From positions 124,001 to 188,000 of IMG/VR virus record IMGVR_UViG_3300047994_000374: a DNA stretch of 64,000 nt; one strand, given 5' to 3'. Below the pieces are notes generated by a model. That model saw nothing but the letters and a program-made list of their open reading frames with translations, made no database searches and had not been told where the DNA came from. Position 1 is the stretch's first letter, and each line of letters starts with the position of its first letter. The position numbers and the translations under genes were made by a program. Positions 13,515 through 38,691 of this stretch are shown here, one piece after another.

Positions 13515-13958
13515 TCACATGAATCCTTTTAGCTTTTGAAACTTGGTTAATTTTTTAAATATAATCTCTTCACTATCTTTAAAAGTATTTTTAATTACAA
13601 AGAAGCATATGAAAGCGTCATTATAACTTGCCTCATATCCCATATTGTAATTATTCCAATGTATATTAATATATGGTATTTCATAAGTCAGTGGAAGTGC
13701 CAATGCATTTAATCCACGGTTAATATCATAGTGTGCAAAATGAGTGGATAAGTTATCTGGCACAGGTACAATAATAATCTTATCCCCAGTTGTATTATAA
13801 AGCTTTGTAAATTCATTTAAGAAATTATAATTTTTTACATTTTTATCAAAGTAATCTTGAATGTTTTGTGAAAATGTAAGTTTATATTTTTGCTTAATTT
13901 CTTTTAACAAATTATCAGCGTATGCTTGTTTGTTATCATTGAGCCGTTCATTGAACAT
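13515..13958 (-). CDS. Hypothetical protein with shared C-terminal motif
   Basis: Ends TKFQKLKGFM*. Confidence 0.6.
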   Translation of the reverse strand: MFNERLNDNKQAYADNLLKEIKQKYKLTFSQNIQDYFDKNVKNYNFLNEFTKLYNTTGDKIIIVPVPDNLSTHFAHYDINRGLNALALPLTYEIPYINIHWNNYNMGYEASYNDAFICFFVIKNTFKDSEEIIFKKLTKFQKLKGFM

Positions 13959-14121
13959 TAGCGATAAGCCTTTTGAATTCTTCTTCTGTCAGCTCCACGC
14001 TATTTAAAACTTTTTTCAAAGGTTCAAGATGATCTCTTGCCCCTATTGTTATTATGATTTTGCCAGGGTTATCGGACCTTGTGCATTCAATATAAGATTT
14101 GTCTGGCCAACTAATTTTCAA
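13948..14121 (-). CDS. Small hypothetical protein (57 aa, not in ORF track)
   Basis: TTG start overlapping the upstream TGA; MKISWPDKSYIECTRSDNPGKIIITIGARDHLEPLKKVLNSVELTEEEFKRLIANVQ; fills an operon gap. Confidence 0.55.
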   Translation of the reverse strand: MKISWPDKSYIECTRSDNPGKIIITIGARDHLEPLKKVLNSVELTEEEFKRLIANVQ

Positions 14122-14336
14122 TTGACACTCCGTGGAATATAAACTTCGCGCATTTCTTTCGTAAGAAGCTTTTGATTTATTACAGGTTCTTTTTGTGAAT
14201 GTTTGATTGTAAATTGAATGGCTTCTAATAAATCCATATGCAAAGTCATCTCAGATTGTGTGTTTGTTTCGATGTTTTTAAATTGATAAAGATACATATT
14301 AAATACTTTCGTTTGCTCTTTGAGTAACGACTTCAA
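14118..14336 (-). CDS. Small hypothetical protein
   Basis: ORF in operon; true start may be an internal ATG. Confidence 0.5.
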   Translation of the reverse strand: MKSLLKEQTKVFNMYLYQFKNIETNTQSEMTLHMDLLEAIQFTIKHSQKEPVINQKLLTKEMREVYIPRSVN

Positions 14337-15126
14337 CTTTGTTATTAACTATTGCAATTGTGTGTTCGAAATGTGAGTTATTTCTGACGGTCGTTACTGT
14401 CCAATTGTCAAGGGGATCAATATAGGTCTTTGTGTCGCCTCGTGTCAATAATGGTTCGATCGCAAATACCATATTGTTTTGAATTCGAACTCCCTCATTG
14501 GGTTCAGCCCGATTGCAAATAAAGGGATCGCCATGAGGAAGATTTTGTCCATTTAGAATGCCGACAATACCATGGCCACCATAAGTATTAATAGTCCTAA
14601 ATTGATCATTTTTAGCAGTCTTATAAATGATATCTCCAATAACTCCAATTCGTTTTCCAACAGCGACTGCTTTAATTGCATTATCTAAACAAAGCTTGGT
14701 TGTTTCTATTAAATCTCTATCTTCATTTGATTTGGGATGTCCGAAAATCATTGTAATGGCAGTATCAGCAATGGAGTTATTATATGTGGCTCCGAAGTCA
14801 AAACTAATAAGGTCGCCCTGTTTTAAATAGCGTTGTTTGGGAACTCCATGCACCAATTCATTATTTACAGATATACATGCAAAATTCGGAAACTTTTTAT
14901 AATCCTTAAAGGTTGCAATACAATTTCGTTTCGTAATCTCTTCACCTATAAAATTATCTAAATCAAGAAGAGATAATTTAGTTTCGTTCTTGATTAAATC
15001 TTCAAGAAGAACCATTATTTCAGCACAGCATTTTCCGGCAACTCTTAAATCCGCAATCCATTGATCATCATGAAGTCGAATGAAAGAGTTGTTAGAAAAT
15101 AATCCCTTTTGTTTTCCGTATTTCAT
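14299..15126 (-). CDS. map: Type I methionine aminopeptidase
   Basis: CISVNNELVHGVP, DFGA...ADTA, GHGI, IEP, HFEHT; metal ligands present. Confidence 0.93.
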   Translation of the reverse strand: MKYGKQKGLFSNNSFIRLHDDQWIADLRVAGKCCAEIMVLLEDLIKNETKLSLLDLDNFIGEEITKRNCIATFKDYKKFPNFACISVNNELVHGVPKQRYLKQGDLISFDFGATYNNSIADTAITMIFGHPKSNEDRDLIETTKLCLDNAIKAVAVGKRIGVIGDIIYKTAKNDQFRTINTYGGHGIVGILNGQNLPHGDPFICNRAEPNEGVRIQNNMVFAIEPLLTRGDTKTYIDPLDNWTVTTVRNNSHFEHTIAIVNNKVEVVTQRANESI

Positions 15127-15608
15127 GACTCCGCAAGAAATGAGGCAAATTCTTCTGAGCCCAATAAGCCTGCAATCTTCTTATCCAAAAGAGCTACCAT
15201 TGGATTATAAAGTTTGATTGCTGGGCGAGATGTATTGGTATTACCGATACAATCCCAAATATAATTACGAATAGCAATAAGACGCTGGACATTAGCAAGA
15301 TCATTTGCAAGCTTTAATGGCGCGGTGAATTTATCAACCGTGATGGTATCTAATTGCTTTAATAATCCACTTGCTTCTGTGCGAAAATCTTCAACTGACT
15401 GGAGGTTTTCAAGAGGCGCTTCTGTTTCTGCTGGAAGAGAAGTTGAACTTGGTGTTTCTTCTGGCGCAGCTGGGGCTATATCAGCCTTTTGGGGTTCAGG
15501 TGAGGTGCCAGTGCGTTTTATTGTGGAAGGCTTTTTAACTGCCTTTTTAGTAAGCTGGGTAGGGAGTTCCTGAGTTTCTAATTCTGGAGATACTTTCTTA
15601 TCAGTCAT
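15123..15608 (-). CDS. Hypothetical protein with disordered Pro/Thr/Glu-rich N-terminus
   Basis: 161-aa ORF coupled to map. Confidence 0.6.
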   Translation of the reverse strand: MTDKKVSPELETQELPTQLTKKAVKKPSTIKRTGTSPEPQKADIAPAAPEETPSSTSLPAETEAPLENLQSVEDFRTEASGLLKQLDTITVDKFTAPLKLANDLANVQRLIAIRNYIWDCIGNTNTSRPAIKLYNPMVALLDKKIAGLLGSEEFASFLAES

Positions 15609-15610
15609 TG

Positions 15611-15949
15611 TTATTGTCCTTTTGCTTGAGTTGAGTTGGCGCCACGGAGTATCTCGCCGCTTTCGCTCAATCCATCGGCAGCTGTCATCCCATATTTAGC
15701 AAATAACTGTGAAACAACCAAACGATATTCTAATTCAGATTTCTCGTTATTAGCAAGGGCTGTTTTTGCTTCCGCAACTGCCGTAAGCTTTTTTTGCTGG
15801 GCAAGCTGGAGGTGAAGAAAGTCTTCTGTTTGAAGTTTTTCCTTGGGTGCTTCAGGCGCAGGAACAACAACTGCTGGAGTTGAAACTGGCGCTGGTGGAG
15901 CGTTATCATGTGATACTAGTTTGAGATCTGGTGGCATTGATTCGGTCAT
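15611..15949 (-). CDS. Hypothetical coiled-coil protein
   Basis: 112-aa ORF, GGAG SD, GATATATA motif upstream. Confidence 0.6.
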   Translation of the reverse strand: MTESMPPDLKLVSHDNAPPAPVSTPAVVVPAPEAPKEKLQTEDFLHLQLAQQKKLTAVAEAKTALANNEKSELEYRLVVSQLFAKYGMTAADGLSESGEILRGANSTQAKGQ

Positions 15950-16020
15950 TTAATTCTCCGGTTATTGGTAAATAATACTACTTGATATGTTATATATCCA
16001 GTTTATAATAACTATTTATT

Positions 16021-16131
16021 TTAAGTAGTCAATGGTAGTTGATTAAGATATTCTAAAAATTCTGTTTTTAAATATTTTACAAGTTTTTTCCATAATATTT
16101 TCGTCCATCTATTCGTAATATATTTATTCAT
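16021..16131 (-). CDS. Possible 36-aa peptide
   Basis: MNKYITNRWTKILWKKLVKYLKTEFLEYLNQLPLTT downstream of TTGACG-N16-TAAGGT (16141-16168). Confidence 0.3.
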   Translation of the reverse strand: MNKYITNRWTKILWKKLVKYLKTEFLEYLNQLPLTT

Positions 16132-16175
16132 AGGTTTATTACCTTAATCATTTATGATAAAACGTCAATAGATAT

Positions 16176-17468: not shown

Positions 17469-17541
17469 TTACAGTCCATAAGTAAGTTGTTGGGTTACTT
17501 TATTGCCCGGTGAAACTTATCTTATTTAATATTCTTTGCCA

Positions 17542-17922
17542 TTATTCCTCTTGATCGAAAACTGAAAAACTTTCCACTGTCATTTCTAAATATACTTGCT
17601 TCTTTTTATCAGGTTGAGAAAGGTCTGTTTTCAATTTATATGCAGGTTTAGTCATAGAGGCTATTTTATCTTTTTCTAAATAAACCTCCATCGTTTCCGG
17701 GGTATCAATTACATGCAAATTGTAAATGGCAAGTAGTTGTCTTAATTCCATTTTTTGTTCTGTAGTCAATACGGTTTCTTCTGGCCAAATGAATTCTACT
17801 TTTTCAGCCGCTTCGGTATTATCAAACATCTGCAATAATAATGAACGAAGGAAGCGAGCTTTCTCTTCAGCTTCAACTTGCCTTGTATTTTCATTATGAT
17901 TGAGAAGTATAACTGTTTTCAC
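17542..17922 (-). CDS. Hypothetical protein
   Basis: 126-aa ORF directly after nrdA. Confidence 0.6.
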   Translation of the reverse strand: MKTVILLNHNENTRQVEAEEKARFLRSLLLQMFDNTEAAEKVEFIWPEETVLTTEQKMELRQLLAIYNLHVIDTPETMEVYLEKDKIASMTKPAYKLKTDLSQPDKKKQVYLEMTVESFSVFDQEE

Positions 17923-17924
17923 TT

Positions 17925-20622: not shown

Positions 20623-20696
20623 GTAGCCTTGTTTTAGATAGAAGTGTCCATTAAGCTTGTATAGTGCAAGCTTTCTATATAACCTTTTGATTCGGA

Positions 20697-21329
20697 TTAT
20701 ATTTTAATATTATCTCGAAGTTTATCGAGAGCATCGTTTAAAATATCGATGCATTTGTTTCGATTGATATTAAGCTTATGACAAATTTTATTAATTGACA
20801 TTGGCTTATCACCATCAAAACCATAAGCTAACAAAATAACCGTTCGCTTTCGTTTCGTCAAGGACTTCAAAACATCGCGTATTGCTTTCGAAGTTTCTTT
20901 TTCCTCTGCAGAATCAAAAGCATTCATCCCCTCATCAATCATTTCTGGGATTTCAATTTCTTTATGAGGAGCAACGTCTTTTGCGATTTTCATTGGGTAT
21001 CGAATAGTGGAGTGCATGTTCGCGGCTCTTGAAATTCGCGTCCCAATATAATGATGTGCCCAGGAAAAGAAGCTTCCCTTTTTCTGATTGTAGGTTTTCA
21101 TCGCTCGCAAAAGAGCCTCAAAACCCTCTTGATTAAGATCGTCATAATTAGCAAATGACTTATATCTACCAGTGCGCACCGTAACCAAATACTTAAATTT
21201 TTCCATACAAACTTGAAGATGCTTATTTAATTCTTCTTGACTGCCATCTTCTTTTGCTTTAGCCTTGAGACCATTCAATTTGGTCATCAATTCTTTAGCT
21301 TCTTTTTCCGTAATCATTTCATCTCGCAT
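20697..21329 (-). CDS. Phage sigma70-family RNA polymerase sigma factor (start revised to ATG 21329 or 21317)
   Basis: DDLNQEGFEALLRAMKTY..KKGSFFSWA region 2; LTKRKRTVILLAYG...MS..KI region 4 HTH. Confidence 0.88.
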   Translation of the reverse strand: MRDEMITEKEAKELMTKLNGLKAKAKEDGSQEELNKHLQVCMEKFKYLVTVRTGRYKSFANYDDLNQEGFEALLRAMKTYNQKKGSFFSWAHHYIGTRISRAANMHSTIRYPMKIAKDVAPHKEIEIPEMIDEGMNAFDSAEEKETSKAIRDVLKSLTKRKRTVILLAYGFDGDKPMSINKICHKLNINRNKCIDILNDALDKLRDNIKI

Positions 21330-21405
21330 TTGGTGGTAAGTATATATTTCAATATCCCCATAGTTGTATTGCATCATACAGCTAATTATGGGTAAGTATT
21401 GAATT

Positions 21406-21549
21406 TTATTGCTGCATTTCCAATAAACTTTCTCGAACACTTTCTACGGTTGTTCTTAAAATTTCATCATCACTTAAAGATAAAGCAAACTCAAGCAATT
21501 CAATAATGCTTTGAATTTTATCTCTTTCAATGATGATTTTATTTTTCAC
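21406..21549 (-). CDS. Small helical protein (47 aa, not in ORF track)
   Basis: GTG immediately after the upstream TAA; MKNKIIIERDKIQSIIELLEFALSLSDDEILRTTVESVRESLLEMQQ. Confidence 0.55.
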   Translation of the reverse strand: MKNKIIIERDKIQSIIELLEFALSLSDDEILRTTVESVRESLLEMQQ

Positions 21550-21738
21550 TTATTTGTAGCCTTCTTTTGCCCACCCACCACCAACAAGTGCGAAATTTGT
21601 TGAAGAAATAAGACGCTTTAATTTCTTTGGTTCCAAGCCTTCTTCTTTACATTTCGGACATTCTTCTACTGTGTCTTTAATGGAATGTTGGAGTTCAAAA
21701 ACCTTATGAAGTTCGCACTCATATTCGTATACTGGCAT
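21550..21738 (-). CDS. FmdB-like zinc-ribbon protein
   Basis: MPVYEYEC..H.VFE...CPKC...RLIS...F...GGGW. Confidence 0.85.
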   Translation of the reverse strand: MPVYEYECELHKVFELQHSIKDTVEECPKCKEEGLEPKKLKRLISSTNFALVGGGWAKEGYK

Positions 21739-21748
21739 CGGGTTCCTT

Positions 21749-21958
21749 TTAGTTAATACTGTAAGACTCTAATTTAATTAATCTTTTAATATTGTCAAGT
21801 GCCTTCTCTACATTATCCAGCTTATTATTAATCATTTCGATTTCATAAGCCTTTTGACTGGCAGATAAGGATGTATCTTTACTTAAATCATCAATCTTTT
21901 TTAATGTTTCGATGAGTTCTGTTTTGAGTTCTAGTAGTTTGTCGGTATTGACACTCAT
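21749..21958 (-). CDS. Small coiled-coil protein
   Basis: 69-aa ORF with heptad pattern. Confidence 0.55.
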   Translation of the reverse strand: MSVNTDKLLELKTELIETLKKIDDLSKDTSLSASQKAYEIEMINNKLDNVEKALDNIKRLIKLESYSIN

Positions 21959-22266
21959 CGTTTTTTGCTTCGATCAATTTGTTGGGTAAGCTTTTGAAAA
22001 TTGGATTCGCCCAACAAATTTGCGTAAACCTTTTCTGATTTACTTGCATCTCTTTGTAGCTTAGCTGTATCTGACTTCATCTGGGCAACCAATTCATTTC
22101 CTGTGAGTTCGACGACACCCCTACTACCACCAGGACTAATCAAACGTTTTACTTCATGTTTCTGTCCAGTTGATTCGCACTTTGGGCAAAATTCTAATTT
22201 AATAGATATAGAATGAAATTCTTCAAACTCTCCGCAAGTTCCGCATTCGTATAAATAAGTGGGCAT
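21955..22266 (-). CDS. FmdB-like zinc-ribbon protein
   Basis: MPTYLYECGTCGEFE...CPKC...RLIS. Confidence 0.85.
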   Translation of the reverse strand: MPTYLYECGTCGEFEEFHSISIKLEFCPKCESTGQKHEVKRLISPGGSRGVVELTGNELVAQMKSDTAKLQRDASKSEKVYANLLGESNFQKLTQQIDRSKKR

Positions 22267-22308
22267 AATTATTTCCTTTTCTATTAAACATATATCCAGT
22301 CAAAACTA

Positions 22309-22569
22309 TTATTCGTTCCAAAATGCTTTCATTTTTAGCAATCTACTTGCACCATCTATACTAAAAGTGTTTAAATCAATTTCGGGCGACCATTCAAGAG
22401 CATTATAATTTATTACTTCATGTGGCTCAAGTGAGCAGTCACATACTCTTATTTTGTCGCTACTCATGGATGGATAATATGGTAAAATATTTAATTTCAT
22501 TAATTTAAGTCCTGTTCGATGAGTTTTATGATCGTAATAGTCTGCATATTTAATGTGCCCAGAATCCAT
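22309..22569 (-). CDS. Hypothetical protein with variant of the shared C-terminal motif
   Basis: Ends SRLLKMKAFWNE*. Confidence 0.5.
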   Translation of the reverse strand: MDSGHIKYADYYDHKTHRTGLKLMKLNILPYYPSMSSDKIRVCDCSLEPHEVINYNALEWSPEIDLNTFSIDGASRLLKMKAFWNE

Positions 22570-22620: not shown

Positions 22621-22800
22621 TTAGTCATTGACAGCTAAAGCCTTCCCAATAATCTTAAACTCAATATCGCTTAACCAATCACGAATAATAGTTTGCTTTA
22701 GTTTCTCGTCCTTAACTTCAAAGACAATATACATTCTACCGGTAAGATCGTCTCTCTCCACTCTTACGGCTTCGGCAACTATCTTTTCGTCAGGCTTCAA
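22621..22800 (-). CDS. Small hypothetical protein (start revised to TTG 22800)
   Basis: MKPDEKIVAEAVRVERDDLTGRMYIVFEV...; the longer N-terminus overlaps dnaB. Confidence 0.55.
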   Translation of the reverse strand: MKPDEKIVAEAVRVERDDLTGRMYIVFEVKDEKLKQTIIRDWLSDIEFKIIGKALAVND

Positions 22801-24220
22801 TTTCCAAATCCTCAATCTCTTCTGAAATGTCATCCATGTTATATTGAATGAATTGTTTATTGATATCGGAAGATCCCTCTTCTTCTTTTTCATCAATATT
22901 TAAAAGGGTAGCGCAAGCAAAGTTCTTAATCAACTTGCCCTGGGTTTTTGGACCCTTTCTATTTTTGATCAAGTGAAGTTTTAGATCAAAATGCTGCTCT
23001 TCTTGAGGGCGGGATTCAATTTGAAGAACGTGGGTGGCATGGGTTGCGATGGTTGCAGAACGAGCCAATCGTGATAAGCCAATGTTCTCTGCTGGGTCTT
23101 TACCAGTGCCTGCCTTTCGATTTAACTGAACGGCTGAAAAGATTGGAATGTTTCTACGACGAGCAATGCTACGGGTCTCATAAGATATAACTCCCTGCTT
23201 CAACCAATCTTGCTCATCTGAATTGCCTTCATTGGGCTTCATAATTCCAAGGTAGTCAATGATCGATACATCAACATTGAAAGTGCAGTCATCAATAATT
23301 GCATCAATATCATTTGCGCAAGCGTCTGGAATATCTACAATCTCGAAATGATTTGGATATCGTTTAATGAAATCCAATGCTTTTTTAAGTCGAGCCATCT
23401 CATCACGATCAAGTGTGGCGTTTTCAATCTTATGGGAAGACACTCCTGAAAGTCTGGATAATAAACGATTAAAGCAATCCTCATGATTCATTTCAAGGGA
23501 GAAGTAAATTACATTCTTGCCTGGTTTGAATTCAGTATCATCTATGGAATTTCCTTGCATCCAAATCTGAACCGCCATATTATTAAGGACCAGTGATTTG
23601 CCGAATCCAGACTCACCACAAACAAGAATGAAATCACTTCCTTTAATTCCATTGGTTGCCGTATCAAAGAATGTGTAGCCCGTTTTAATCCCAACATCTA
23701 AATCAGGATTATTCTTTCGAGCATTAAATCGTTCGGTAAATGAGGCGAGTGAATCCTTAATCGTTCTGCGTTCAAAAGACTTTGCTTCTTTGATGGACTT
23801 TACATTTTGTATAATCTTTTGAATATCTTGAACTGTCTTATCGACATTAACGGAACCTGGCTCTATTTTGGCTAATTGGTTCTTGGCTAATAGAATTTGT
23901 TCTTCTGAATAGCGCGTTTTAAGTTTATTAAGGAAATGCTTATACTCTTCCGGCTTTACATGAACTTCATCAAGCTCGCCCCAAACTCCATGGATATGTT
24001 CAAGTAGCTTTTCATTGTTTGGTTTGTTTAATTTTTCAGATAGAACTCGTAAGGTAGGAAGTTCCTTATGTGTCTTGATATAGGAAACAATGGTATTGGC
24101 AAAGTTCCAAACATCCACGGAAAATAACTTGGCGTCCGTTTCTGCCACAAATTCAAGGGCAAATTTCTTATTGGTGATTAAATTTTTAAGGACGATTAGG
24201 TCAATTTCTTGTATGCTCAT
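22790..24220 (-). CDS. dnaB: DnaB-family replicative helicase
   Basis: GESGFGKS, YFSLEM, IIDYLGIM, SAVQLNR, IKNRKG. Confidence 0.92.
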   Translation of the reverse strand: MSIQEIDLIVLKNLITNKKFALEFVAETDAKLFSVDVWNFANTIVSYIKTHKELPTLRVLSEKLNKPNNEKLLEHIHGVWGELDEVHVKPEEYKHFLNKLKTRYSEEQILLAKNQLAKIEPGSVNVDKTVQDIQKIIQNVKSIKEAKSFERRTIKDSLASFTERFNARKNNPDLDVGIKTGYTFFDTATNGIKGSDFILVCGESGFGKSLVLNNMAVQIWMQGNSIDDTEFKPGKNVIYFSLEMNHEDCFNRLLSRLSGVSSHKIENATLDRDEMARLKKALDFIKRYPNHFEIVDIPDACANDIDAIIDDCTFNVDVSIIDYLGIMKPNEGNSDEQDWLKQGVISYETRSIARRRNIPIFSAVQLNRKAGTGKDPAENIGLSRLARSATIATHATHVLQIESRPQEEQHFDLKLHLIKNRKGPKTQGKLIKNFACATLLNIDEKEEEGSSDINKQFIQYNMDDISEEIEDLEIEA

Positions 24221-24918
24221 TTTGCCTTTCGGAAGTCATTGCCAAATACTGGAAACATTGTCATATACCCATTAAATAAACTTCCAATACTTTCTTTCAA
24301 TGGTCCCTGTAAACTTTCAAGTATATTAGGTGAGTTAGTGCACATAATGGTCGGCAATTTATTTGAAGCCCTTGTTCTAAATACTGATTCTAAAGTCCGG
24401 GCATATAAATCACTGGCACTTGATGAGCCATACATTCTTGCATCAAATTCATCTAAAACTAAAAAATCAACCAAATTTAATTCTCTACGAGCCAAATATT
24501 TTTCATCATTATCTGCCGAGGTCATTACAGACACGACGCTTGACAAATCAGTATAAAGAGCAGTGTATCCTTTTTGAACCGCCTTCTTTAAAATACAGGT
24601 AGACGTTAGGGTTTTTCCACGACCATGCTGCCCCGCTAAACAAATTGAACCTCCTGACATGTAAGAGGACTTCATATCAGCCGTATACTCATCGAACTTT
24701 ACTTTAAGATTTGGATCGCCTTTAAAATCTCGCTCCATTTTTAAGCTCCAATACTCAATAGGAATATTAGCTTCTGCATAACGATTGATAGCAGTGGTGC
24801 GAACAAGCTTTTTCTGAATATCAATATCGCTTTCACTAACTACATTGAGCGCTTCTTGTAGTTTCTTTTGAGGAATATTGTTAAGTGCTTTTGAGCGACA
24901 AAAATTTTGGAAGTCCAT
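24217..24918 (-). CDS. DnaC/IstB-like AAA+ helicase loader
   Basis: GQHGRGKT, LVLDEF, R..NKLPTIMCTN, DFR; adjacent to dnaB. Confidence 0.85.
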   Translation of the reverse strand: MDFQNFCRSKALNNIPQKKLQEALNVVSESDIDIQKKLVRTTAINRYAEANIPIEYWSLKMERDFKGDPNLKVKFDEYTADMKSSYMSGGSICLAGQHGRGKTLTSTCILKKAVQKGYTALYTDLSSVVSVMTSADNDEKYLARRELNLVDFLVLDEFDARMYGSSSASDLYARTLESVFRTRASNKLPTIMCTNSPNILESLQGPLKESIGSLFNGYMTMFPVFGNDFRKAK

Positions 24919-25300
24919 AATCTACCGGCTTTACTTCATTGGTTATAGTGTGTGTGCTTAATTTTTCTGATAATTCTTTTCGCTCTTCTTCATTGAGTAA
25001 GCTTTTTAATTGAGCGAGATTTTTATTCTTTAAATCTGATGTAGGTTGTTCTTTTACTTCTTCAAACTTTTCTTCTAACTTTGCTTTTTGAACTTGTCGT
25101 GGTGATGTTTCTTTTGGGACTGATTTGCCTATTTCAATTTCCACCATTAGGATTGTTTCAGTTGGATGGTATATAATAAGCATCTTGGAGTTCTTTTCCA
25201 AGATGACATTGTCTTTATTCCATTCTTTTACGATACCATCAATACAAAGATCGTTCTTTAAAAAAACTTTTACTTGTTGACCTAAATTTGGGGTTTTCAT
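24881..25300 (-). CDS. Hypothetical protein (Sm/SH3-like beta N-terminus, charged C-terminus)
   Basis: GQQVKVFLKN...IDGIVKEW pattern. Confidence 0.55.
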   Translation of the reverse strand: MKTPNLGQQVKVFLKNDLCIDGIVKEWNKDNVILEKNSKMLIIYHPTETILMVEIEIGKSVPKETSPRQVQKAKLEEKFEEVKEQPTSDLKNKNLAQLKSLLNEEERKELSEKLSTHTITNEVKPVDYGLPKFLSLKST

Positions 25301-25656
25301 AAAAATGGTCCTAAATAATAAAATCTTTTATATTGTACAATGTAATCGTCATTTATTATAGCCACTTTATAATATGCAAATCCTTTAGGAATTGAATTCC
25401 AGAATTGTTTTGGAAACATTCCCCATAAAATAATATCATTATCTTTTATATACAAATAATTAAGAGGCAAACGATTTGGATTTTGCCCAGTAGAACCCGA
25501 TCCAACGACCACTGGGTTTTCTGCTATAATATACGCTTCTGTAATTGCAAATCCCATATAATTACCTGAGAGCAAATTTCCAATATAAGAATAAACAACC
25601 TTACTAAAAGGTTTTTCAGTTATTTTTTCAAATTCACTTACATGCATAAATCTCAT
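25297..25656 (-). CDS. Tandem paralogue A1 with shared C-terminal motif
   Basis: Starts MRFMHVSEFEKIT, ends YKRFYYLGPFL*. Confidence 0.65.
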   Translation of the reverse strand: MRFMHVSEFEKITEKPFSKVVYSYIGNLLSGNYMGFAITEAYIIAENPVVVGSGSTGQNPNRLPLNYLYIKDNDIILWGMFPKQFWNSIPKGFAYYKVAIINDDYIVQYKRFYYLGPFL

Positions 25657-25955
25657 AAGAACGCCATTATCTTATCGTATTTTTTATAGAGTTCTGGAAA
25701 TTTTTCATAACTCACAAACCACACGATCTTTGCGTTTGAATAACTTTCTTTCCATTGCCCATAAATGCAACAAAGATTATTTACATCCAATCCATTATTC
25801 GAAGCAAACATCCTACATCTTAATTGGAAATCTTTATCTTGTATGGCAGACACAAATGCTTGTATTTTTTGAATTCTGACAATTTCATTAAACTTATCTG
25901 GATCAAGGTACGTTCCTGTAATTTCTTTAAATGCATCTGCGCCAATAAATCTCAA
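25653..25955 (-). CDS. Tandem paralogue A2 with shared C-terminal motif
   Basis: Starts MRFIGADAFKEIT, ends YKKYDKIMAFL*. Confidence 0.65.
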   Translation of the reverse strand: MRFIGADAFKEITGTYLDPDKFNEIVRIQKIQAFVSAIQDKDFQLRCRMFASNNGLDVNNLCCIYGQWKESYSNAKIVWFVSYEKFPELYKKYDKIMAFL

Positions 25956-26272
25956 ACGAACGCCTCAATATTAAGAAATTTTTTATACATTTCCAATACG
26001 TCCATATCACTTATTAATACAACGCCAACTCGATTCGGATTATTTGTAAAACTAACTGAGCCAAATAAAACCACACAACGATCTGCGTCAAAGTAAGCGT
26101 AATACTTGTCTATTAATGCCCTACATTCTGTTTTAAAGAATTTCATTTCAACGCTTGTGTAGATGGCTGAAAAATTATCAAACACAGTGCGCATCTCGTT
26201 AAAAGTGCGCTGATCGAACTCTTCTCCAACTACTCGTTTAAATTGTTTGGGTCCGATGTATCTTATTTTCAT
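25952..26272 (-). CDS. Tandem paralogue A3 with shared C-terminal motif
   Basis: Starts MKIRYIGPKQFKRVV, ends YKKFLNIEAFV*. Confidence 0.65.
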   Translation of the reverse strand: MKIRYIGPKQFKRVVGEEFDQRTFNEMRTVFDNFSAIYTSVEMKFFKTECRALIDKYYAYFDADRCVVLFGSVSFTNNPNRVGVVLISDMDVLEMYKKFLNIEAFV

Positions 26273-26907: not shown

Positions 26908-28197
26908 CTACTCTATTTTATACATGCTTTGCGCTAAATTTATTTTTAATTCTGATATAATAACTTCTTTATATGATTGCCTTCTTATAATTCGTAAGAC
27001 TATATGTCGATCACAATTATATTTTTTAGATATTTCATTAATTTTTAATCCAGCAATAAAATCATCGAATACGTTTTCTACAATATGTGAATATCGTCCA
27101 TAATTAGGATCTTTTAATTTAAGGGCATGGCGGAGTTTTTGTTTAGATATTTTTAGTTGGTCCGATATTTCTTCTATAGTTTTTCCAGATTCAAATAGAG
27201 AAATTATCGTTAACTTAACGCTTGGAATAATTTGCTTCATTCTTCTTTGGAGTGGAATTTTATCAATAATTTTTAATAATTGAGATTCTATAATAATATT
27301 TTGCCATAATTTCATATCTAAAATATTATAAATTTTTTGCTGACTTAATTTATAAGTCTTACCTATATAATTTAATTTATTTTTATCTGGATAGACTTTA
27401 AATATTTGTGTTTTAATATCAACGCGGGATGCATCGTCCCTAATAATGTGACGAATATCATTTAAAATTTTTTGAGTTTTTGTAATAATTTTTGAATCTA
27501 TTGGTACGGTTTTCCAAGTCTGTCGCCGGAGAACAAACTCAATATTTGAAATTTGGACATTAAATATTTTGGCAACTTTTGTTAATGATTTTAATTTAAT
27601 AAATTTTGTAAAAATATCAGGAATAATTCTAGCTTTTAGCTTAATTAATTTCCCGTTTTCATTCATTTTTGGTATAAATTTACGATGTCGTTTAAGCCAT
27701 GTTTGATATAAAGTCTCATCATTAATAGCAATCGAAATATAAATTTTTCTATTTAAAATATCTTTAATAGATGATAAATTTATTTTATATTTTATAGCAA
27801 TTTCTGATGTACACATATCAGTATTAATATAATCTTTGAATATATTTTTAATAGCTCTTGGTCCGAGCTTCCTTCCTGAATCGCCAAACCCGCGGCCTCC
27901 CGATGTCAGATTATAACCAAATTTTTGCTTATTTGATTTAAATTGTGATATATATTCGATTTCCTTTAAATAAGCCAAATTTTCATTTTCTAAATATTCG
28001 ATTATGTCAAATTTAAAATTATCTAAACCATATTTTAAAATTGCCCTATGTATTGGTAGTTGTTTTTTAGTTTTTGATTTTAATGAATCTCGAACATGAT
28101 CCCTCCATCGTCTAGTTGGATTGGCGCTGGTTTTTCCTATATAAATTTTATTGTTCTTCATATTAGTAATTGAATATATACAAAAGTTTTTGTTCAT
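26908..28197 (-). CDS. GIY-YIG homing endonuclease with repeated HTH-like C-terminal domains
   Basis: CIYSITN..NNKIYIGKT...RRW..H, E..YI, GYNLTSGG. Confidence 0.88.
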   Translation of the reverse strand: MNKNFCIYSITNMKNNKIYIGKTSANPTRRWRDHVRDSLKSKTKKQLPIHRAILKYGLDNFKFDIIEYLENENLAYLKEIEYISQFKSNKQKFGYNLTSGGRGFGDSGRKLGPRAIKNIFKDYINTDMCTSEIAIKYKINLSSIKDILNRKIYISIAINDETLYQTWLKRHRKFIPKMNENGKLIKLKARIIPDIFTKFIKLKSLTKVAKIFNVQISNIEFVLRRQTWKTVPIDSKIITKTQKILNDIRHIIRDDASRVDIKTQIFKVYPDKNKLNYIGKTYKLSQQKIYNILDMKLWQNIIIESQLLKIIDKIPLQRRMKQIIPSVKLTIISLFESGKTIEEISDQLKISKQKLRHALKLKDPNYGRYSHIVENVFDDFIAGLKINEISKKYNCDRHIVLRIIRRQSYKEVIISELKINLAQSMYKIE

Positions 28198-30550: not shown

Positions 30551-30576
30551 ATAAAAATGCCGTTAAAATGATAGAA

Positions 30577-30825
30577 CTATCTTTTAAGTAGTATCATCAG
30601 TTTTGGTGTGCCGCCCAAATATCCAAATAACTTTAATAAATAAAAAGCTATTATAAAAGTAAATTCATCATCATTATCAAATCCACCAAAACTCCCACCT
30701 AAAGTCATTTGTTTGCTATTTGATTTTATAAGTTTAAAATAATATCCTATTTTATATAGGAATCCGCCTGCATTTAATACAAATGCAATAATAACAATGA
30801 CAGATGCAATAACAGTAATTATCAT
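30577..30825 (-). CDS. Small membrane protein, holin candidate
   Basis: Two hydrophobic segments, immediately upstream of the endolysin. Confidence 0.4.
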   Translation of the reverse strand: MIITVIASVIVIIAFVLNAGGFLYKIGYYFKLIKSNSKQMTLGGSFGGFDNDDEFTFIIAFYLLKLFGYLGGTPKLMILLKR

Positions 30826-32240
30826 TTTCTACGATCGATCTTGCCACCGCCCATAAGCTTGCCAAATGAGCTGCTCTGACTTGCAATCTTGTCCTTGATC
30901 TTTTGAGCTGCACTGACATTTGCTTCCGTTCCCGTATCAATCTTCAAATTCAAAGAGCGGTTCTCATCTTTGACTTTTGCCTTTTGATTAAGCTCCTTTG
31001 TCTCTGCCTTTAACTGTTCAATTCGTGCATCAGGTAACAGTAGTCCAGAAAACAACGAATATACTTTGACAACATTCTCTGGCATGTTAGTCTCATAAAT
31101 TCCTTTGAAGATATTTTTTGGAGATCCACAAGCGTCATTCACCATAGCAAGCGCATAATTGATCGAAGCATTTGGAATTTTTGCCCACACATCTTTATTA
31201 GCGACAAAGAGCACTCCAACATAGGCTGATTGTTTAAGATCAAATCCACCGGCTAAAAGATTATTATTCATATTATTGATAACGGCTTCTGCCAATGAAG
31301 TTTCTTCTTCAAAATTATCAACTGATAACTCTCCATAAACAGTTAAACCTGAAGTGCCCAAAAGAAGCTTCGTAAATTCAGCTTCATCCAATCCCTTTGT
31401 AGCAGACGGAGTGCTTGACAAAGTATTGAAAACATCTAGTGGTTCAACAATAGCTTTGTTTGCCACATTGAAGAAACTCATTGGACTGACATCCGCGTAG
31501 ATTGCTTCTAACTTAGCATTATCAACGACAATGAGATTTGAGATTTTATTATTCTGAGCAAGATTGGCTAATTTAGAAAGTGTCGTCAAAGCATTTGATT
31601 TCGTTTGTGAATCCTCAGAATCCATTGGTAAGGCTGCAATAACAATCACAGGCCTTCCAACTTCATTTAAGACCTCAACCATTGTTTCCGCTGACCCTGC
31701 GCCTGAACCACCACCGAGTGAAGTGCAGAAAATATTTACTTGTGAGTCTGCAAGCTTATCATTGACTAATTGAAGAATTTCACCTTTGTAAGAAATTGCA
31801 GCGGAATGTCCAATCTGCAATTCTTTCGCGGCACCTCCGATATGCTGCTCTAATAAAAGCTTATTCGCATCTGGAATATTAATGCCCTTTAAATCAACAA
31901 GCGTAGTATTGCAAACAACCGCCGCATAACCTAAATTATAAAAGGCTTCGGCAAGTCTTGAACCGCATTGACCTGATCCAACAATACCAAACTGCAAACT
32001 TCTTTCTTTCTTTGCTACAATCTTCGCTGCCATCTTACTCTCCTGTGCCTTCGCTGCACTTTTCGCTTTTAATGCCGCCAACTTTTTCTCATCAACTGGA
32101 GCTTCTGGTTGTTTGACTTCCAAATCACTTACATCGTCTTTTACTTCTTCGGTCATATTTTTCTCTTCCATTTCGGTCTTTGAGGTTGCAGTCATAGTGT
32201 TATCAATCCTTATTCTCGGGATACGCGGTGGATTATGCAT
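30822..32240 (-). CDS. Tubulin/FtsZ-superfamily GTPase (PhuZ/TubZ-like); start may be slightly downstream
   Basis: GIVGSGQCGSRLA, GGAAKE..IG, SLGGGSGAG signature, VVDN, LDEAEF T7-like loop. Confidence 0.88.
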   Translation of the reverse strand: MHNPPRIPRIRIDNTMTATSKTEMEEKNMTEEVKDDVSDLEVKQPEAPVDEKKLAALKAKSAAKAQESKMAAKIVAKKERSLQFGIVGSGQCGSRLAEAFYNLGYAAVVCNTTLVDLKGINIPDANKLLLEQHIGGAAKELQIGHSAAISYKGEILQLVNDKLADSQVNIFCTSLGGGSGAGSAETMVEVLNEVGRPVIVIAALPMDSEDSQTKSNALTTLSKLANLAQNNKISNLIVVDNAKLEAIYADVSPMSFFNVANKAIVEPLDVFNTLSSTPSATKGLDEAEFTKLLLGTSGLTVYGELSVDNFEEETSLAEAVINNMNNNLLAGGFDLKQSAYVGVLFVANKDVWAKIPNASINYALAMVNDACGSPKNIFKGIYETNMPENVVKVYSLFSGLLLPDARIEQLKAETKELNQKAKVKDENRSLNLKIDTGTEANVSAAQKIKDKIASQSSSFGKLMGGGKIDRRK

Positions 32241-36698: not shown

Positions 36699-37709
36699 TT
36701 AAAGTCCTACTTGCAATCCTAATAATGCCCCAAAATTACCAGAAGTATCTAAGAATACACTTGGACCAAAATATGTATTATGGAGCAGAGGAACAATTTT
36801 ACCAATATTAAAAGTTATCGGAGTTATGAGTAACTCTGGTTTTCTACTGATGACACCATATCCAATGCCAACAGCCGCAATCGATAAATCAGGAGTTGTT
36901 TTAAATTGCCCATATGAAAACAATGCTAAATCTAAATTTGGAGAAAATTCACCCTGCACCGGGTTTAAAGCTATACCACCAGCGATACCAATAAGGGGGC
37001 GAGGATTGAAACTAAATGATGCCGTTGGAACTTGCTGAACAGTCTTGGCAGTAGTAATAGGGAGCGTATAAGTTTGACCATTAACAACTATTGTAAATTT
37101 ATTGAAAAATGCTACCTGTCCATTCGTATCTGTGGCAACCACATTATCTACATTGTATTGACGAGGATAAACATTCAATGTCCAGGGCGTATTTGACCAT
37201 GCTGAAAATCCTGCATTCCCCCATGGAACTTGCGTAGATGGTGCAAAATCTTCATTGAGAACCAAATTCTGTTGTGTTTTTTGATAACCAAACGGATCTG
37301 CATTTGGACATACCGCAGTTGAACCTGTACAAGGAACCGTAGTGGTTGCTACGGGATTTGGATTGACCGGACCATTGGAAGAACTTACTCCATTCTTTAC
37401 GGCTTGACCTTGGCTATTGACTTGAATAGTATTGGCAGCAGTAATCGTTCCATTCAACTTATCTACTGCATCTTGCACGGTCTTTAAATTAACACCATTT
37501 TGAGTGATGAAATTGTCAAGGTCTGATTTTGTTGCAAATTGACTTGAGCTTTGTGTAATGCCGTTGATCAATTGTTGTTGGGCAATTTGTGAATTAGCAA
37601 TTGTTGTTTGTTGCACTTTCATTTCGTGCTGGAGATAAATAATAACTCCAAGTGCGGCGACAAGAATGAGTGATCCCAAAGCAATTAAAATTTTGTTCAA
37701 AGTCGTCAT
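36699..37709 (-). CDS. Envelope protein: N-terminal TM helix, coiled coil, C-terminal amphipathic beta-strands
   Basis: ILIALGSLILVAALGVIIYL; Gln-rich coil; ends FGALLGLQVGL. Confidence 0.55.
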   Translation of the reverse strand: MTTLNKILIALGSLILVAALGVIIYLQHEMKVQQTTIANSQIAQQQLINGITQSSSQFATKSDLDNFITQNGVNLKTVQDAVDKLNGTITAANTIQVNSQGQAVKNGVSSSNGPVNPNPVATTTVPCTGSTAVCPNADPFGYQKTQQNLVLNEDFAPSTQVPWGNAGFSAWSNTPWTLNVYPRQYNVDNVVATDTNGQVAFFNKFTIVVNGQTYTLPITTAKTVQQVPTASFSFNPRPLIGIAGGIALNPVQGEFSPNLDLALFSYGQFKTTPDLSIAAVGIGYGVISRKPELLITPITFNIGKIVPLLHNTYFGPSVFLDTSGNFGALLGLQVGL

Positions 37710-37735
37710 AGTTCTTCCTTTTAACTTAATGTGCT

Positions 37736-37763
37736 AATGTAATATTTAATCAATAATTGTCAA
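37736..37763 (-). promoter_or_regulatory. Sigma70-type promoter TTGACA-N16-TACATT
   Basis: Intergenic, upstream of 37709 with AAGGAAG SD. Confidence 0.55.
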
Positions 37764-37771
37764 GTGGTGAA

Positions 37772-38071
37772 TTAAGAAAATGCTGATAACCTATTGTATC
37801 GTTCTACTGCTGCCAACAAGGTATCATCTGCATATTTCTTTCCATCTTTAATATATGGTGAATACATTAAATCCCAACGTCTTTGTTTCGGAGCGTATGG
37901 TTCCAAATAAAGTAGGCGAGCCCAATTGATAATCCACTTATAATTTTCGTCATCTCTTTTAATTCCAAACTCTATCCAGGACTCATTATTAACTCTAACA
38001 TAATCATTTCTCATCCATCTTTTATGCCAAGGACTTAATATGATTTTCTTTTTACCTACAATAATTTTCAT
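37772..38071 (-). CDS. Tandem paralogue B1 with shared C-terminal motif
   Basis: KIILSPWHK...; ends VERYNRLSAFS*. Confidence 0.6.
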   Translation of the reverse strand: MKIIVGKKKIILSPWHKRWMRNDYVRVNNESWIEFGIKRDDENYKWIINWARLLYLEPYAPKQRRWDLMYSPYIKDGKKYADDTLLAAVERYNRLSAFS

Positions 38072-38406
38072 ATAAACGTCTGTAATTTAAGGTATCTTTT
38101 AAGAATATATAGGGATTGATCTTGAGCTGCTTTTAATGTTTCAAATTTATTGTTTAATTTATTTAGAAACATTTCATTCAAAAAAGATAAATCATGAAAA
38201 AATTTAATATGATATTTATCGCCCTTTCTAATGCTACATAAATTTCCCATTGTTTTTCCAGCTGCATAAGATGTTCCGCTATCCCAACGACTATCTAATC
38301 CGCTGCAAAAATGTTGCTTATCTTTGGGACGAAAATAAATCTTTTCTTCTTCCCAATAATTAAGTATAAATTCTCGATTATCTAATTTAAATTTTAGTAA
38401 TGACAT
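38068..38406 (-). CDS. Tandem paralogue B2 with shared C-terminal motif
   Basis: EFILNYWEE...; ends LKRYLKLQTFI*. Confidence 0.6.
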   Translation of the reverse strand: MSLLKFKLDNREFILNYWEEEKIYFRPKDKQHFCSGLDSRWDSGTSYAAGKTMGNLCSIRKGDKYHIKFFHDLSFLNEMFLNKLNNKFETLKAAQDQSLYILKRYLKLQTFI

Positions 38407-38691
38407 TTATAAAAATGCCTTTATCGACATATACTTTTCTAAAATACGATCGGCGAGATCACAAGCTTCTTTTATATTATTAAAGATAATGGGTGATGGA
38501 AGTAATTGGTTAGTTGGTTCAAATTCACGATAAAATTTAATACTCCATCTGTCGCTTATACCAAAATGCTGGACAACAATAGCAAATGGCTGTGATTCTA
38601 TTAAAAATGAACGACTATAAATGATGCGGATTTGTTCATCGATACCAGATCCACTCCATTTATGCCAATCTGTTAAATTTATTTTCCCCAT
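38407..38691 (-). CDS. Tandem paralogue B3 with shared C-terminal motif
   Basis: KINLTDWHK...; ends LEKYMSIKAFL*. Confidence 0.6.
   Translation of the reverse strand: MGKINLTDWHKWSGSGIDEQIRIIYSRSFLIESQPFAIVVQHFGISDRWSIKFYREFEPTNQLLPSPIIFNNIKEACDLADRILEKYMSIKAFL

What the first reader, a model, noticed from the sequence alone, without database searches (positions are those of the whole stretch)
13515..38691. Eight small proteins from unrelated families share a C-terminal tag: candidate phage sorting/docking signal
Seen: C-termini are LTKFQKLKGFM* (13515), ASRLLKMKAFWNE* (22309), YKRFYYLGPFL* (25297), YKKYDKIMAFL* (25653), YKKFLNIEAFV* (25952), VERYNRLSAFS* (37772), LKRYLKLQTFI* (38068) and LEKYMSIKAFL* (38407). 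Consensus is hydrophobic-x-[KR]-[FY]-x-x-[LIM]-x-[AGPT]-F-x-stop, an amphipathic helix with Phe at the penultimate position in seven of eight. The bodies fall into two distinct tandem families plus two singletons at four loci, and codons differ synonymously, so conservation is at protein level. None of the recognisable enzymes or virion proteins ends this way. Inference: a portable tag delivering diverse cargo (e.g. anti-defence or host-takeover effectors) to one receptor, such as capsid packaging/ejection machinery, a clamp or polymerase pocket, a phage compartment, or a protease adaptor. Caveat: the x-A/G-F part sometimes overlaps the SD of the next coupled gene, but 37772 has no coupled gene and the upstream [KR][FY]xx[LIM] is not explained by an SD.
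Basis: partly seen in the sequence, partly recalled or inferred. Interest (0 to 1): 0.85.

Follow-up and report, generated by a model that had tools for sequence, protein, structure and literature searches.

The report
Conserved C-terminal tail in jumbo-phage proteins
Dozens of small, otherwise dissimilar proteins of an uncultured 394-kb phage and its relatives end in the same nine residues (R/K-h-x-K/N-L-K-A-F-L, then stop), most likely a peg that docks them onto one shared, still unidentified partner.

Summary
All eight C-termini read as written. Seven fit [KR][FY]xx[LIM]x[AGPT]Fx-stop, against 0.01 expected. The window belongs to a 394-kb IMG/VR phage contig from moss metagenomes. Relatives, which are an independent test set, carry the same tail (20 hits against 0.03 expected). 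Other parts of the same genome hold tandem arrays of tagged genes: about 41 of 130 ORFs in 97 kb. I collected 113 distinct tagged proteins in about 82 body clusters.

Synonymous sites vary freely, so selection acts on the protein. The motif sits with exactly one residue after Phe in 60 of 65 unbiased occurrences. The last nine residues are conserved on every side of the helix. The first half of the 19-residue helix evolves like the body. About a quarter of tagged genes have no coupled downstream gene yet keep the tail.

Bodies show no detectable homology, and two low-confidence models differ in topology. No Pfam, PHROG or PDB match exists.

Best reading (0.5): a C-terminal docking peg for a common partner, receptor unknown. 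Main rival (0.25): one ancient superfamily with a structural helix. T4-type clamp tails, the PDF ribosome helix and a neighbouring Kelch propeller were tested as leads and not supported.

The parts
13515..13958 (-). 147-aa tagged protein. Tail KFQKLKGFM at 13518-13544. Its stop is directly followed by the ATG of the AAA_28 gene at 12960-13514.
   Evidence: Positional orthologues of 160-161 aa in L015, L017, L018 and L076 end ..K[FL]xxLKAF[LV]*. The gene is absent at this position in L011.
22309..22569 (-). 86-aa tagged protein just downstream of DnaB. Tail RLLKMKAFW at 22318-22344, followed by two extra residues (NE). This is the one exception to the 'one residue after F' rule.
   Evidence: Positional orthologues in L014, L017, L018, L020 and L005 end ..LKAFW*, and the one in L002 ends ..RFRSFL*.
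25297..25656 (-). 119-aa protein, third gene of tandem trio A. Tail KRFYYLGPFL, last nine codons at 25300-25326. ATGA overlap with the untagged 139-aa gene at 24881-25300.
   Evidence: weak similarity to 25952, E 0.1.
25653..25955 (-). 100-aa protein, second gene of trio A. Tail KKYDKIMAFL, last nine codons at 25656-25682. It also has an internal look-alike, RIQKIQAF, 66 residues before the end.
   Evidence: (paralogue of 25952, E 1e-6).
25952..26272 (-). 106-aa protein, first gene of trio A. Tail KKFLNIEAFV, last nine codons at 25955-25981.
   Evidence: AF2 model with pLDDT 54: three helices, a beta hairpin and a C-terminal helix at 92-105; the last four residues have pLDDT below 50. Only itself was found among 5.8 billion proteins.
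37772..38071 (-). 99-aa protein, last gene of trio B. Tail ERYNRLSAFS, last nine codons at 37775-37801. TAA stop and no coupled gene. A sigma-70-like promoter for the next gene lies at 37763-37736.
38068..38406 (-). 112-aa protein, middle gene of trio B. Tail KRYLKLQTFI, last nine codons at 38071-38097.
   Evidence: In a 95-99% identical strain (run X7) residue -3 is Ala instead of Thr, which is the consensus residue.
38407..38691 (-). 94-aa protein, first gene of trio B. Tail EKYMSIKAFL, last nine codons at 38410-38436.
   Evidence: Body-level BLAST relatives in L019. AF2 model with pLDDT 65: five to six strands plus a helix at 73-93; the last three residues have pLDDT below 50.

Best explanation
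The tail is a C-terminal docking peg. Each of these small accessory proteins ends in an amphipathic helix of about 19 residues. The first two to three turns of the helix pack on the protein's own variable body. The last two turns, [RK]-h-x-[KN]-[LIM]-[KR]-[AVS]-F-[LIV] plus the free carboxylate, stick out and are read on all sides by a pocket of one shared partner. The variable bodies, a third of which carry an N-terminal CxxC zinc ribbon, supply the individual specificity or activity. The family would thus be a set of interchangeable heads on one plug, made from early or middle operons and from tandem arrays that grow and decay. Shown here: the motif, its exact terminal position, protein-level selection, its spread over many bodies and genomes, and its accessory nature. 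Inferred: that a partner exists, that the end of the helix is exposed, and what the partner is. The candidates I rank highest are a cytoplasmic hub such as an AAA+ protease or unfoldase, the replisome or the transcription machinery. I rank these above the capsid.
For: (1) Enrichment at C-termini is about 700-fold in the window and in independent relatives. (2) Position: the motif has exactly one residue after Phe in 60 of 65 occurrences that were not selected by my DNA pattern, and in 25 of 28 in the window plus DnaB-anchored loci (all data 93 of 98). Such a fixed end across about 82 body clusters points to recognition of the free terminus. (3) Conservation profile over 113 proteins: -9 is R or K in 110; -6 is K/N/R in 101; -5 is L/I/M; -3 is A/V/S; -2 is F in 112. 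By helical geometry these positions lie all around the helix. Positions -19 to -10 keep only an amphipathic pattern and an N-cap. (4) In homologous pairs the body is 35% identical, the first half of the helix 37% and the last nine residues 64%. (5) Synonymous sites are free. They are no more alike within a genome than between genomes (0.49 against 0.46), so this is old purifying selection on the peptide. (6) Bodies: hhalign with the tails removed finds nothing between seven groups, except one pair at 25% probability. The two AF2 models differ in topology, and in both the last 3-4 residues have pLDDT below 50. (7) Scale: about 41 tagged genes among 130 ORFs in 97 kb of the same genome, including arrays of 14, 6 and 4 genes, plus about 8 more in L147. 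(8) Tagged genes without a coupled downstream gene keep the tail.
Against: No receptor was identified. There is no multimer prediction and no experiment. Both structure models are of low confidence (pLDDT 54 and 65), so exposure of the last turns is not established. All members share a beta hairpin followed by the helix, and similar sizes, which fits common descent with a structural helix. The tail correlates with TGA stops (65-82% against 40%) and with ATGA overlaps, which hints at some translation-level constraint. A profile of the tail finds nothing new among 1.84 billion representative proteins, so the system is confined to one uncultured clade and cannot be cross-checked in a studied phage.
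Confidence: 0.5

Rival explanations
1. All tagged proteins are one ancient, fast-evolving superfamily of small alpha/beta proteins. The C-terminal helix is simply the best-conserved part of the fold's core. There is no common partner.
For: Members share a common layout, a hydrophobic strand pair followed by an N-capped helix of about 19 residues, and sizes of 65-160 aa. Positional homologues upstream of DnaB from different phages align over their full length. There is no DNA-level sign of tag transfer. In both AF2 models the helix has the highest pLDDT of the chain apart from its last residues.
Against: A structural helix does not explain why the chain stops exactly one residue after Phe in more than 90% of members. 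It does not explain why residues on the polar face (A -3, K/N -6, K -4, R/K -9) are conserved in identity while the packing half of the helix drifts like the body. Profile comparison of the bodies finds no homology, and the predicted topologies differ: three helices plus a hairpin against an all-beta body.
Confidence: 0.25
2. The constraint acts during translation. Either the 3' end of the gene serves as SD and spacer for an ATGA-overlapped next gene, or the last nine residues act as a nascent peptide in the exit tunnel that modulates termination or re-initiation at UGA.
For: TGA is the stop in 28 of 34 DnaB-anchored tagged genes and in 51 of 79 tagged genes not chosen by my DNA pattern, against about 40% of untagged genes. 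TAG is never used. A 4-nt ATGA overlap occurs in 49-58% of tagged genes against 17-18% of untagged ones. AAG-GCN places AAGG at -11..-8, where this phage's SD lies. All-round conservation of the last nine residues is also what a tunnel-bound peptide would show.
Against: Synonymous variation with invariant amino acids rules out a pure RNA signal. Lys at -4 uses AAA 16 times and AAG 12 times, close to the genome's 68:32 ratio. About a quarter of tagged genes have no downstream start within 30 nt, and 25-35% end in TAA, yet their tails are canonical. Tandem duplication and the NTA codon of the last Leu or Ile can explain the ATGA excess. No precedent is known to me for a coupling-enhancing nascent peptide.
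Confidence: 0.08
3. The tail is a membrane-targeting amphipathic helix of the MinD/FtsA type that brings diverse small proteins to the inner face of the cell membrane.
For: The helix is C-terminal, amphipathic and net basic (+1.5 over the last 20 residues), with Phe and Leu on one face. No member has a transmembrane segment.
Against: There is no flexible linker, since the helix follows a beta strand directly. Conservation is not limited to the hydrophobic face. Small Ala at -3 and the exact chain end are not needed for lipid binding. The first half of the helix is acidic.
Confidence: 0.07

Closest known systems
C-terminal sliding-clamp-binding tails of T4 gp43, gp33 and gp55
   Same: A short motif at the extreme C-terminus, shared by otherwise unrelated phage proteins, that plugs them into one hub and can be swapped between them (PMC2988020). 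The helicase in this window is distantly gp41-like.
   Different: The T4 tails are hydrophobic and acidic and hang on a variable, flexible linker (PMC2988020). The tail here is hydrophobic and basic and continues a helix. T4 has three or four clients, whereas this genome has 40 or more. No clamp gene was seen in the parts of the genome I could read.
HbYX motif (hydrophobic-Tyr-X-COOH) of proteasome activators, and the HslU C-terminal tail (own knowledge)
   Same: A penultimate aromatic residue preceded by a hydrophobic or small residue, with exactly one residue and the free carboxylate after it. This is the feature that makes the present tail unusual.
   Different: The aromatic residue here is Phe in 112 of 113 proteins and never Tyr. 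HbYX sits on flexible tails of hexameric ATPases, not on small monomers. No proteasome-like partner is known for this phage.
Ribosome-docking C-terminal helix of E. coli peptide deformylase
   Same: A dedicated C-terminal helix of about 22 residues that anchors an enzyme to one site, the L22/L32 groove at the tunnel exit (bioRxiv 10.1101/312850). The E. coli sequence ..KLDRLKARA* matches tail positions -9 to -3 in register.
   Different: PDF lacks F -2 and L -1. In other Enterobacterales the last nine residues and the chain end vary (..KMAKLNARAN..KLDKQKNRTK..KLARQTTRAS), so the match is peculiar to E. coli and most likely coincidental.
Cargo-targeting peptides of protein shells: encapsulin C-terminal loading peptides, microcompartment encapsulation helices, the T4 capsid-targeting sequence (own knowledge)
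   Same: A short terminal peptide shared by different cargo proteins that binds the inside of a shell. Microcompartment peptides are amphipathic helices of about 18 residues.
   Different: Those peptides are joined by linkers, have other consensus sequences, and are not pinned to the last residue. The T4 signal is N-terminal. The tagged genes here lie in replication-type operons with sigma-70-like promoters, not among late structural genes.
Poxvirus ankyrin/PRANC (F-box-like) and similar viral multigene adaptor families (own knowledge)
   Same: Large, rapidly diversifying, tandemly duplicated viral gene families with variable binding parts and one conserved C-terminal docking element for a host machine.
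   Different: These are eukaryotic viruses with a different fold and motif. The partner (Skp1/cullin) is known there and unknown here.

Membership tests
Any curated protein family (Pfam-A, PHROGs) | A significant match to a family model | tested here: not met
   The eight window proteins have no Pfam hit above the cut-off and only PHROG hits with E of 0.001 or worse. Ten more tagged proteins also gave none, apart from zinc-ribbon noise and one PHROG of unknown function.
T4-type clamp-binding C-terminal motif | [quoted passage not shown] | tested here: not met
   The last nine residues carry K/R at -9, -6 and -4, and the net charge of the last 20 residues is +1.5. The helix follows a strand without a linker. 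Definition taken from PMC2988020.
T4-type clamp-binding C-terminal motif | A gp45-like clamp encoded by the same phage, with binding to it | not testable with these tools
   Only about 117 of 394 kb of the genome could be read, and no clamp was seen there. No multimer prediction was available.
HbYX motif | Hydrophobic-Tyr-X at the extreme C-terminus | tested here: not met
   The position rule is met (one residue after the aromatic), but the residue is Phe in 112 of 113 and Trp in 1 of 113, never Tyr.
PDF-like ribosome-docking helix | A conserved terminal sequence shared with PDF across species | tested here: not met
   E. coli PDF fits positions -9 to -3, but PDFs from ten other Enterobacterales differ in those residues and in chain end.
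MinD/FtsA-type membrane-targeting sequence | A C-terminal amphipathic helix after a flexible linker, with conservation confined to the hydrophobic face and basic flanks | tested here: inconclusive
   The helix is amphipathic and basic. There is no linker, however, and polar-face residues (A -3, K/N -6) are conserved. Lipid binding cannot be tested here.
Solved structures carrying a similar tail | Sequence match of the 22-residue tail profile to any PDB chain | tested here: not met
   The best E-value was 0.62, and no match extended to the A-F-L end. Foldseek of the trio-B model found nothing at E of 0.001 or better.
Kelch (KLHDC2-like) C-end receptor paired with the tail | Co-occurrence or adjacency of the propeller with tagged genes across genomes | tested here: not met
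   The propeller is a core gene of the clade in a fixed NAMPT-UvrD-Kelch-PTH2 block. L143 has it with no tagged gene in 21 kb, and in L144 it is followed directly by a seryl-tRNA-N-like gene and then PTH2. The adjacency in this genome comes from an inserted array.

The most novel reading that the evidence does not exclude
A clade of uncultured 360-490-kb phages runs its own protein address system. A nine-residue C-terminal code, read together with the free carboxylate, delivers 50 or more different small accessory proteins per genome to a single hub. The zinc-ribbon and other heads could bind host or defence targets, and the hub could be a protease or unfoldase, the replisome or RNA polymerase, or a phage-built compartment. 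This would be a bacterial-virus counterpart of the F-box/PRANC type adaptor families of large eukaryotic viruses.
Probability: 0.3. Interest if true: 0.85.

Novelty: new variant of a known kind. Interest (0 to 1): 0.68.

Why it matters
Jumbo phages carry hundreds of small genes of unknown function. Here a sizeable fraction of them, about 30% of the ORFs in the stretches I could read (a sample biased toward the gene arrays), is tied together by one short, strictly terminal peptide. If this peptide is a docking peg, a single pull-down with a 19-mer would name the hub. It would also assign a common mode of action to more than a hundred orphan protein families. The peptide would be a ready-made portable tag for that hub. 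The tandem arrays would then be a natural library of heads evolving against host targets. If instead the tail is only structural, it still defines a large new protein superfamily and a simple sequence rule for recognising it.

Tried and rejected
1. DNA-level element (SD, promoter or recombination site) as the cause. Rejected because of synonymous variation and because uncoupled genes keep the tail.

2. Alternative genetic code or read-through at TGA. Not pursued. Code-11 ORFs of 1250-2368 aa are intact, so TGA is a stop.

3. Kelch propeller next to one array as the receptor. It is a core gene whose adjacency is accidental.

4. MetAP link. One relative has MetAP fused to a tail-bearing domain of about 120 aa (L114). 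Other MetAPs of the clade lack it. This is most simply a fusion with an inserted downstream gene.

5. PDF helix. The match is specific to E. coli.

6. T4 clamp tails. The chemistry differs.

7. Large searches. The word-index search with 25952 found only itself. The tail profile against 1.84 billion representatives returned no new family member: eight training sequences plus one 1617-aa hit with no matched stretch. The ESM Atlas gave only unnamed viral clusters. Foldseek against PDB found nothing.

8. No cultured relative. The best phage hits to the helicase are about 25% identical T4-like gp41.

9. A 143-aa family ending ..NPLNVKAFL* picked up by my DNA pattern looks like a GroES-type co-chaperonin by eye (not run against a family library). 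It is on small contigs and is a chance look-alike.

10. Gene-content comparison of tag-bearing and tag-less relatives around DnaB gave no candidate partner.

11. Read laying showed only DNA-type contigs from moss and soil metagenomes and one run of unknown kind. It gave no usable expression evidence.


Full report
**The observation**

Seven fit [KR][FY]..[LIM].[AGPT]F followed by one residue and the stop. The eighth, 22309, has RLLKMKAFW followed by NE.

With a simple gene call of 69 proteins, the full motif is at 7 C-termini. The internal rate predicts 0.01 and shuffled last-15-mers give 0.015. The short core [LIM]x[AGPTS]Fx is at 7 C-termini against 0.16-0.21 expected. Among about 540 other ORFs of at least 25 aa, only one matches.

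**Where the window comes from, and relatives**

The DnaB-like helicase (22790-24220) is 100% identical to IMGVR_UViG_3300047994_000374, a 394,192-bp viral contig. Window base 1 corresponds to about contig base 124,004. The same DNA is in moss metagenome runs.

The window carries these genes:
- PIN-PhoH
- both ribonucleotide reductase subunits
- a sigma factor
- MetAP
- a DnaC-like loader
- a UvsW-like helicase
- a TubZ-like tubulin
- glycosyltransferases and methyltransferases
- homing endonucleases
- TnpB
- a baseplate J protein

No cultured phage is close. Megablast finds nothing, and the helicase is about 25% identical to T4-type gp41.

A helicase alignment fetched 19 related loci from IMG/VR and metagenomes. 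They have 44-62% identity and sit on contigs of up to 473 kb. Small genes at the same three positions there end in an even cleaner tail, for example KINKLKAFL*, RIVNIKAFI*, RYFELKAFW*, KFQNLKAFL* and RVAKLKAFI*. The three positions are:
- a tandem set between a 200-aa protein and a 139-aa protein upstream of the loader and helicase
- one gene just after the helicase
- one gene before the AAA_28 gene

This is an independent test of a motif defined on the window: 20 C-terminal hits against 0.03 expected. Four relatives (L006, L011, L012, L021) lack the genes at these positions, and there the flanking core genes abut. The tagged genes are therefore accessory insertions.

**Scale**

It returned two kinds of hit. 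Chance hits had an in-frame ORF of 6-30 codons. Real hits had ORFs of 85-170 aa on large contigs.

Four of the loci belong to the window's own genome. They hold tandem arrays:
- about 14 genes of about 100 aa that start MNCPxCN and end ..K[LIM]x[AGS]FL* (L070)
- six genes of 65-76 aa with two CxxC pairs that end ..DPKLKAFT* (L047)
- four genes of about 115 aa (L069)
- further genes in L107

In the 97 kb of this genome then available, 29 ORFs fit a strict pattern and about 12 a looser one, out of 130 ORFs of at least 50 aa. A further 20 kb region of small genes has about 8 of about 55.

Over all loci I collected 113 distinct tagged proteins. They fall into 82 clusters when the last 16 residues are removed (BLASTP E below 1e-3).

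A profile of the tail region found no new member among 1.84 billion representative proteins. Eight of the nine hits were training sequences, and the ninth was a 1617-aa protein with no matched stretch. The family is confined to this uncultured clade.

**Protein level or nucleic-acid level**

In 34 tails from the window and the helicase-anchored loci, first and second codon positions are fixed while third positions vary:
- Ala: GCA 21, GCT 5, GCG 7, GCC 1
- Phe: TTT 22, TTC 11
- Lys: AAA 18, AAG 15
- Leu/Ile/Met at -5: seven different codons

For tails on unrelated bodies, codon identity at identical residues is 0.49 within a genome and 0.46 between genomes. There has been no recent copying of tail DNA, and the peptide is held by old purifying selection.

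There is a real link to gene coupling:
- The stop is TGA in 28 of the 34 and in 51 of 79 tagged genes not chosen by my pattern, against about 40% of untagged genes.
- The stop overlaps the next start as ATGA in 49-58% of tagged genes, against 17-18% of untagged ones.
- This phage's SD is AAAGG at -13..-8, so AAG-GCN of K-A can serve the next gene.

Three points argue against coupling as the cause. Lys at -4 uses AAA 16 times and AAG 12 times, close to the genome-wide 68:32 ratio. About a quarter of tagged genes have no same-strand start within 30 nt. Those genes, including 37772 in the window, have canonical tails. Coupling may shape the last codon and the stop, but it does not create the motif.

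**Anatomy of the tail**

Over the 113 proteins:

| Position | Residues |
|---|---|
| -19 | S/P/T/D (an N-cap) |
| -17, -16 | acidic |
| -15, -14, -12, -11, -8 | hydrophobic |
| -9 | R or K in 110 |
| -6 | K/N/R in 101 |
| -5 | L/I/M in 109 |
| -4 | K or R in 74 |
| -3 | A/V/S in 102 |
| -2 | F in 112 |
| -1 | L/I in 76 |

On a helical wheel (my geometry), the conserved residues of the last two turns point in all directions. The first half shows only a hydrophobic stripe.

In 35 homologous pairs the body is 35% identical, positions -19..-10 are 37% identical and positions -9..-1 are 64% identical. For unrelated bodies the first half is at the random level (10%) and the last nine at 41%. The shared element is therefore the terminal nonapeptide.

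Its position is fixed. The pattern [RK]h.[KNR][LIM].[AVSTG]F occurs 98 times in 2,298 proteins, 93 times with exactly one residue after F. Without the pattern-selected genes the figure is 60 of 65, and in the window plus helicase-anchored loci it is 25 of 28.

In a near-identical strain, the atypical Thr at -3 of gene 38068 is Ala, the consensus residue.

**Bodies**

Within the window, 25653 and 25952 are paralogues (E 1e-6). The pairs 25297/25952 and 37772/38407 are only marginally similar, and 38068, 13515 and 22309 match nothing.

hhalign between seven groups with the last 18 residues removed gives probabilities of at most 1.3%, except one pair at 25%.

AlphaFold2 on small alignments gave low-confidence models:
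- The 25952 family has three helices, a hairpin and a terminal helix (pLDDT 54).
- The 38407 family has five or six strands and a terminal helix (pLDDT 65).
- In both models the last 3-4 residues have pLDDT below 50.

Foldseek against PDB and the ESM Atlas gave nothing useful. Forty of the 113 proteins have CxxC within the first 40 residues, and none has a membrane segment. Charge is unremarkable.

Different folds are thus suggested but not proven. A common hairpin-plus-helix core is visible in all alignments.

**Context**

A near-consensus sigma-70-type promoter (TTGACA, 16 nt, TACAAT; window 26905-26878, minus strand) precedes an operon. The operon runs 200-aa protein, trio A, 139-aa protein, loader, helicase. 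Another promoter-like site follows gene 37772. The arrays consist of small genes of the kind usually expressed early. This speaks, weakly, for a cytoplasmic early or middle role rather than packaging into capsids.

**Search for a partner**

A 405-aa Kelch propeller lies directly upstream of one array. It is a core gene of the clade in a fixed block. It occurs in a relative with no tagged gene nearby, so the adjacency is accidental.

T4 clamp-binding tails are acidic and sit on linkers.

The C-terminal ribosome-docking helix of E. coli deformylase (bioRxiv 10.1101/312850) matches tail positions -9..-3 in register. That relaxed pattern is otherwise found only in tagged proteins in my data, at 65 of 2,003 C-termini; 64 have F at -2 and one is a degenerate member ending ALL. 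However, deformylases of other Enterobacterales vary in just these residues and in chain end, so I treat the match as coincidence.

A tail profile finds nothing in PDB. Comparing gene content of tag-bearing and tag-less loci around the helicase gave no candidate.

**Verdict**

The most economical reading of three facts is a docking peg recognised together with the free carboxylate by one partner (0.5). The facts are a fixed chain end, all-round conservation of the last two turns, and drifting bodies. The partner is unknown.

A purely structural helix in one old superfamily is the main rival (0.25). A translation-level role (0.08) and membrane targeting (0.07) are less likely.

The two leading readings are not exclusive as to origin. 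The family may well descend from one ancestor and still use the tail as a plug.

No curated family, solved structure or studied phage covers this element. The general idea of a C-terminal docking peptide is known. This motif, its strict geometry and its scale in a phage genome are not.

Noticed in passing
window 30822-32240 (-): A TubZ/PhuZ-like tubulin conserved next to the UvsW-like helicase in all relatives. Its own C-terminus is conserved as ..FGKL(5-7 residues)DRRK*, which looks like a second terminal docking peptide, different from the tail studied here.
   Followed up: partly
window 14299-15126 (-); L114:2161-3324: The phage encodes a methionine aminopeptidase (Peptidase_M24). In one relative it is fused to a C-terminal domain of about 120 aa that ends in the canonical tail (..LKRLRNLKAFL*). 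Other relatives have the plain enzyme.
   Followed up: partly
L069:1989-3206 (same genome, contig 368-381 kb); L143, L144: A 405-aa Kelch-repeat beta-propeller is a core gene of this phage clade, with 141 homologues on contigs of up to 498 kb. It sits in a block with NAMPT, ADP-ribosyl glycohydrolase, a UvrD helicase, PTH2, tRNA-synthetase-like genes, Thg1, NAD-dependent ligase, and in some genomes SET and PARP domains.
   Followed up: partly
L070:6080-6544 and L147:9432-10465 (same genome): An identical 154-aa protein occurs at two places of the 394-kb contig. At one place it follows a serine recombinase (Resolvase) gene, so this is probably a duplicated insertion element. The window also holds a TnpB/OrfB_IS605 gene (49804-50928), a LAGLIDADG gene (42348-43196) and a GIY-YIG gene (26908-28197).
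   Followed up: no
window 25653-25955 (-), residues about 27-34: The protein carries an internal look-alike of the tail (RIQKIQAF) 66 residues before its real C-terminal tail. This may be chance or the trace of an internal duplication.
   Followed up: no
L060:3260-3691, L083, L065 and others: A 138-143-aa family on small viral contigs ends ..NPL[NK]VKAF[LI]*. By eye it resembles a GroES-type co-chaperonin; I did not run it against a family library. It lacks R/K at -9 and the helix, so it is a chance look-alike that my DNA pattern picked up.
   Followed up: partly
L097, L137, L142:1947-3246, L147:18864-19824: Some zinc-ribbon arrays use variant ends such as ..KLKTIINFS*, ..KLQTLITFS*, ..RRMKLVAF* (no residue after F) and ..ELLLAYT* (Tyr for Phe). 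Some array members have lost the tail altogether (L070:2609-2932, L070:4234-4521). The arrays appear to evolve by birth and decay.
   Followed up: no
window 20697-21440 (-): A phage-encoded sigma-70-family factor (regions 2 and 4) lies between the ribonucleotide reductase genes and two small FmdB-type zinc-ribbon genes (21550-21738 and 21955-22266) that start MPxYxYxC.
   Followed up: no
window 37128-39205, run X7: A run of unknown library type from a coded organism holds short contigs 95-99% identical to this stretch. They carry a 3-nt in-frame deletion in gene 37772 and five substitutions in trio B. One restores consensus Ala at -3 of 38068, and one changes Tyr to Cys at -8 of 38407.
   Followed up: partly
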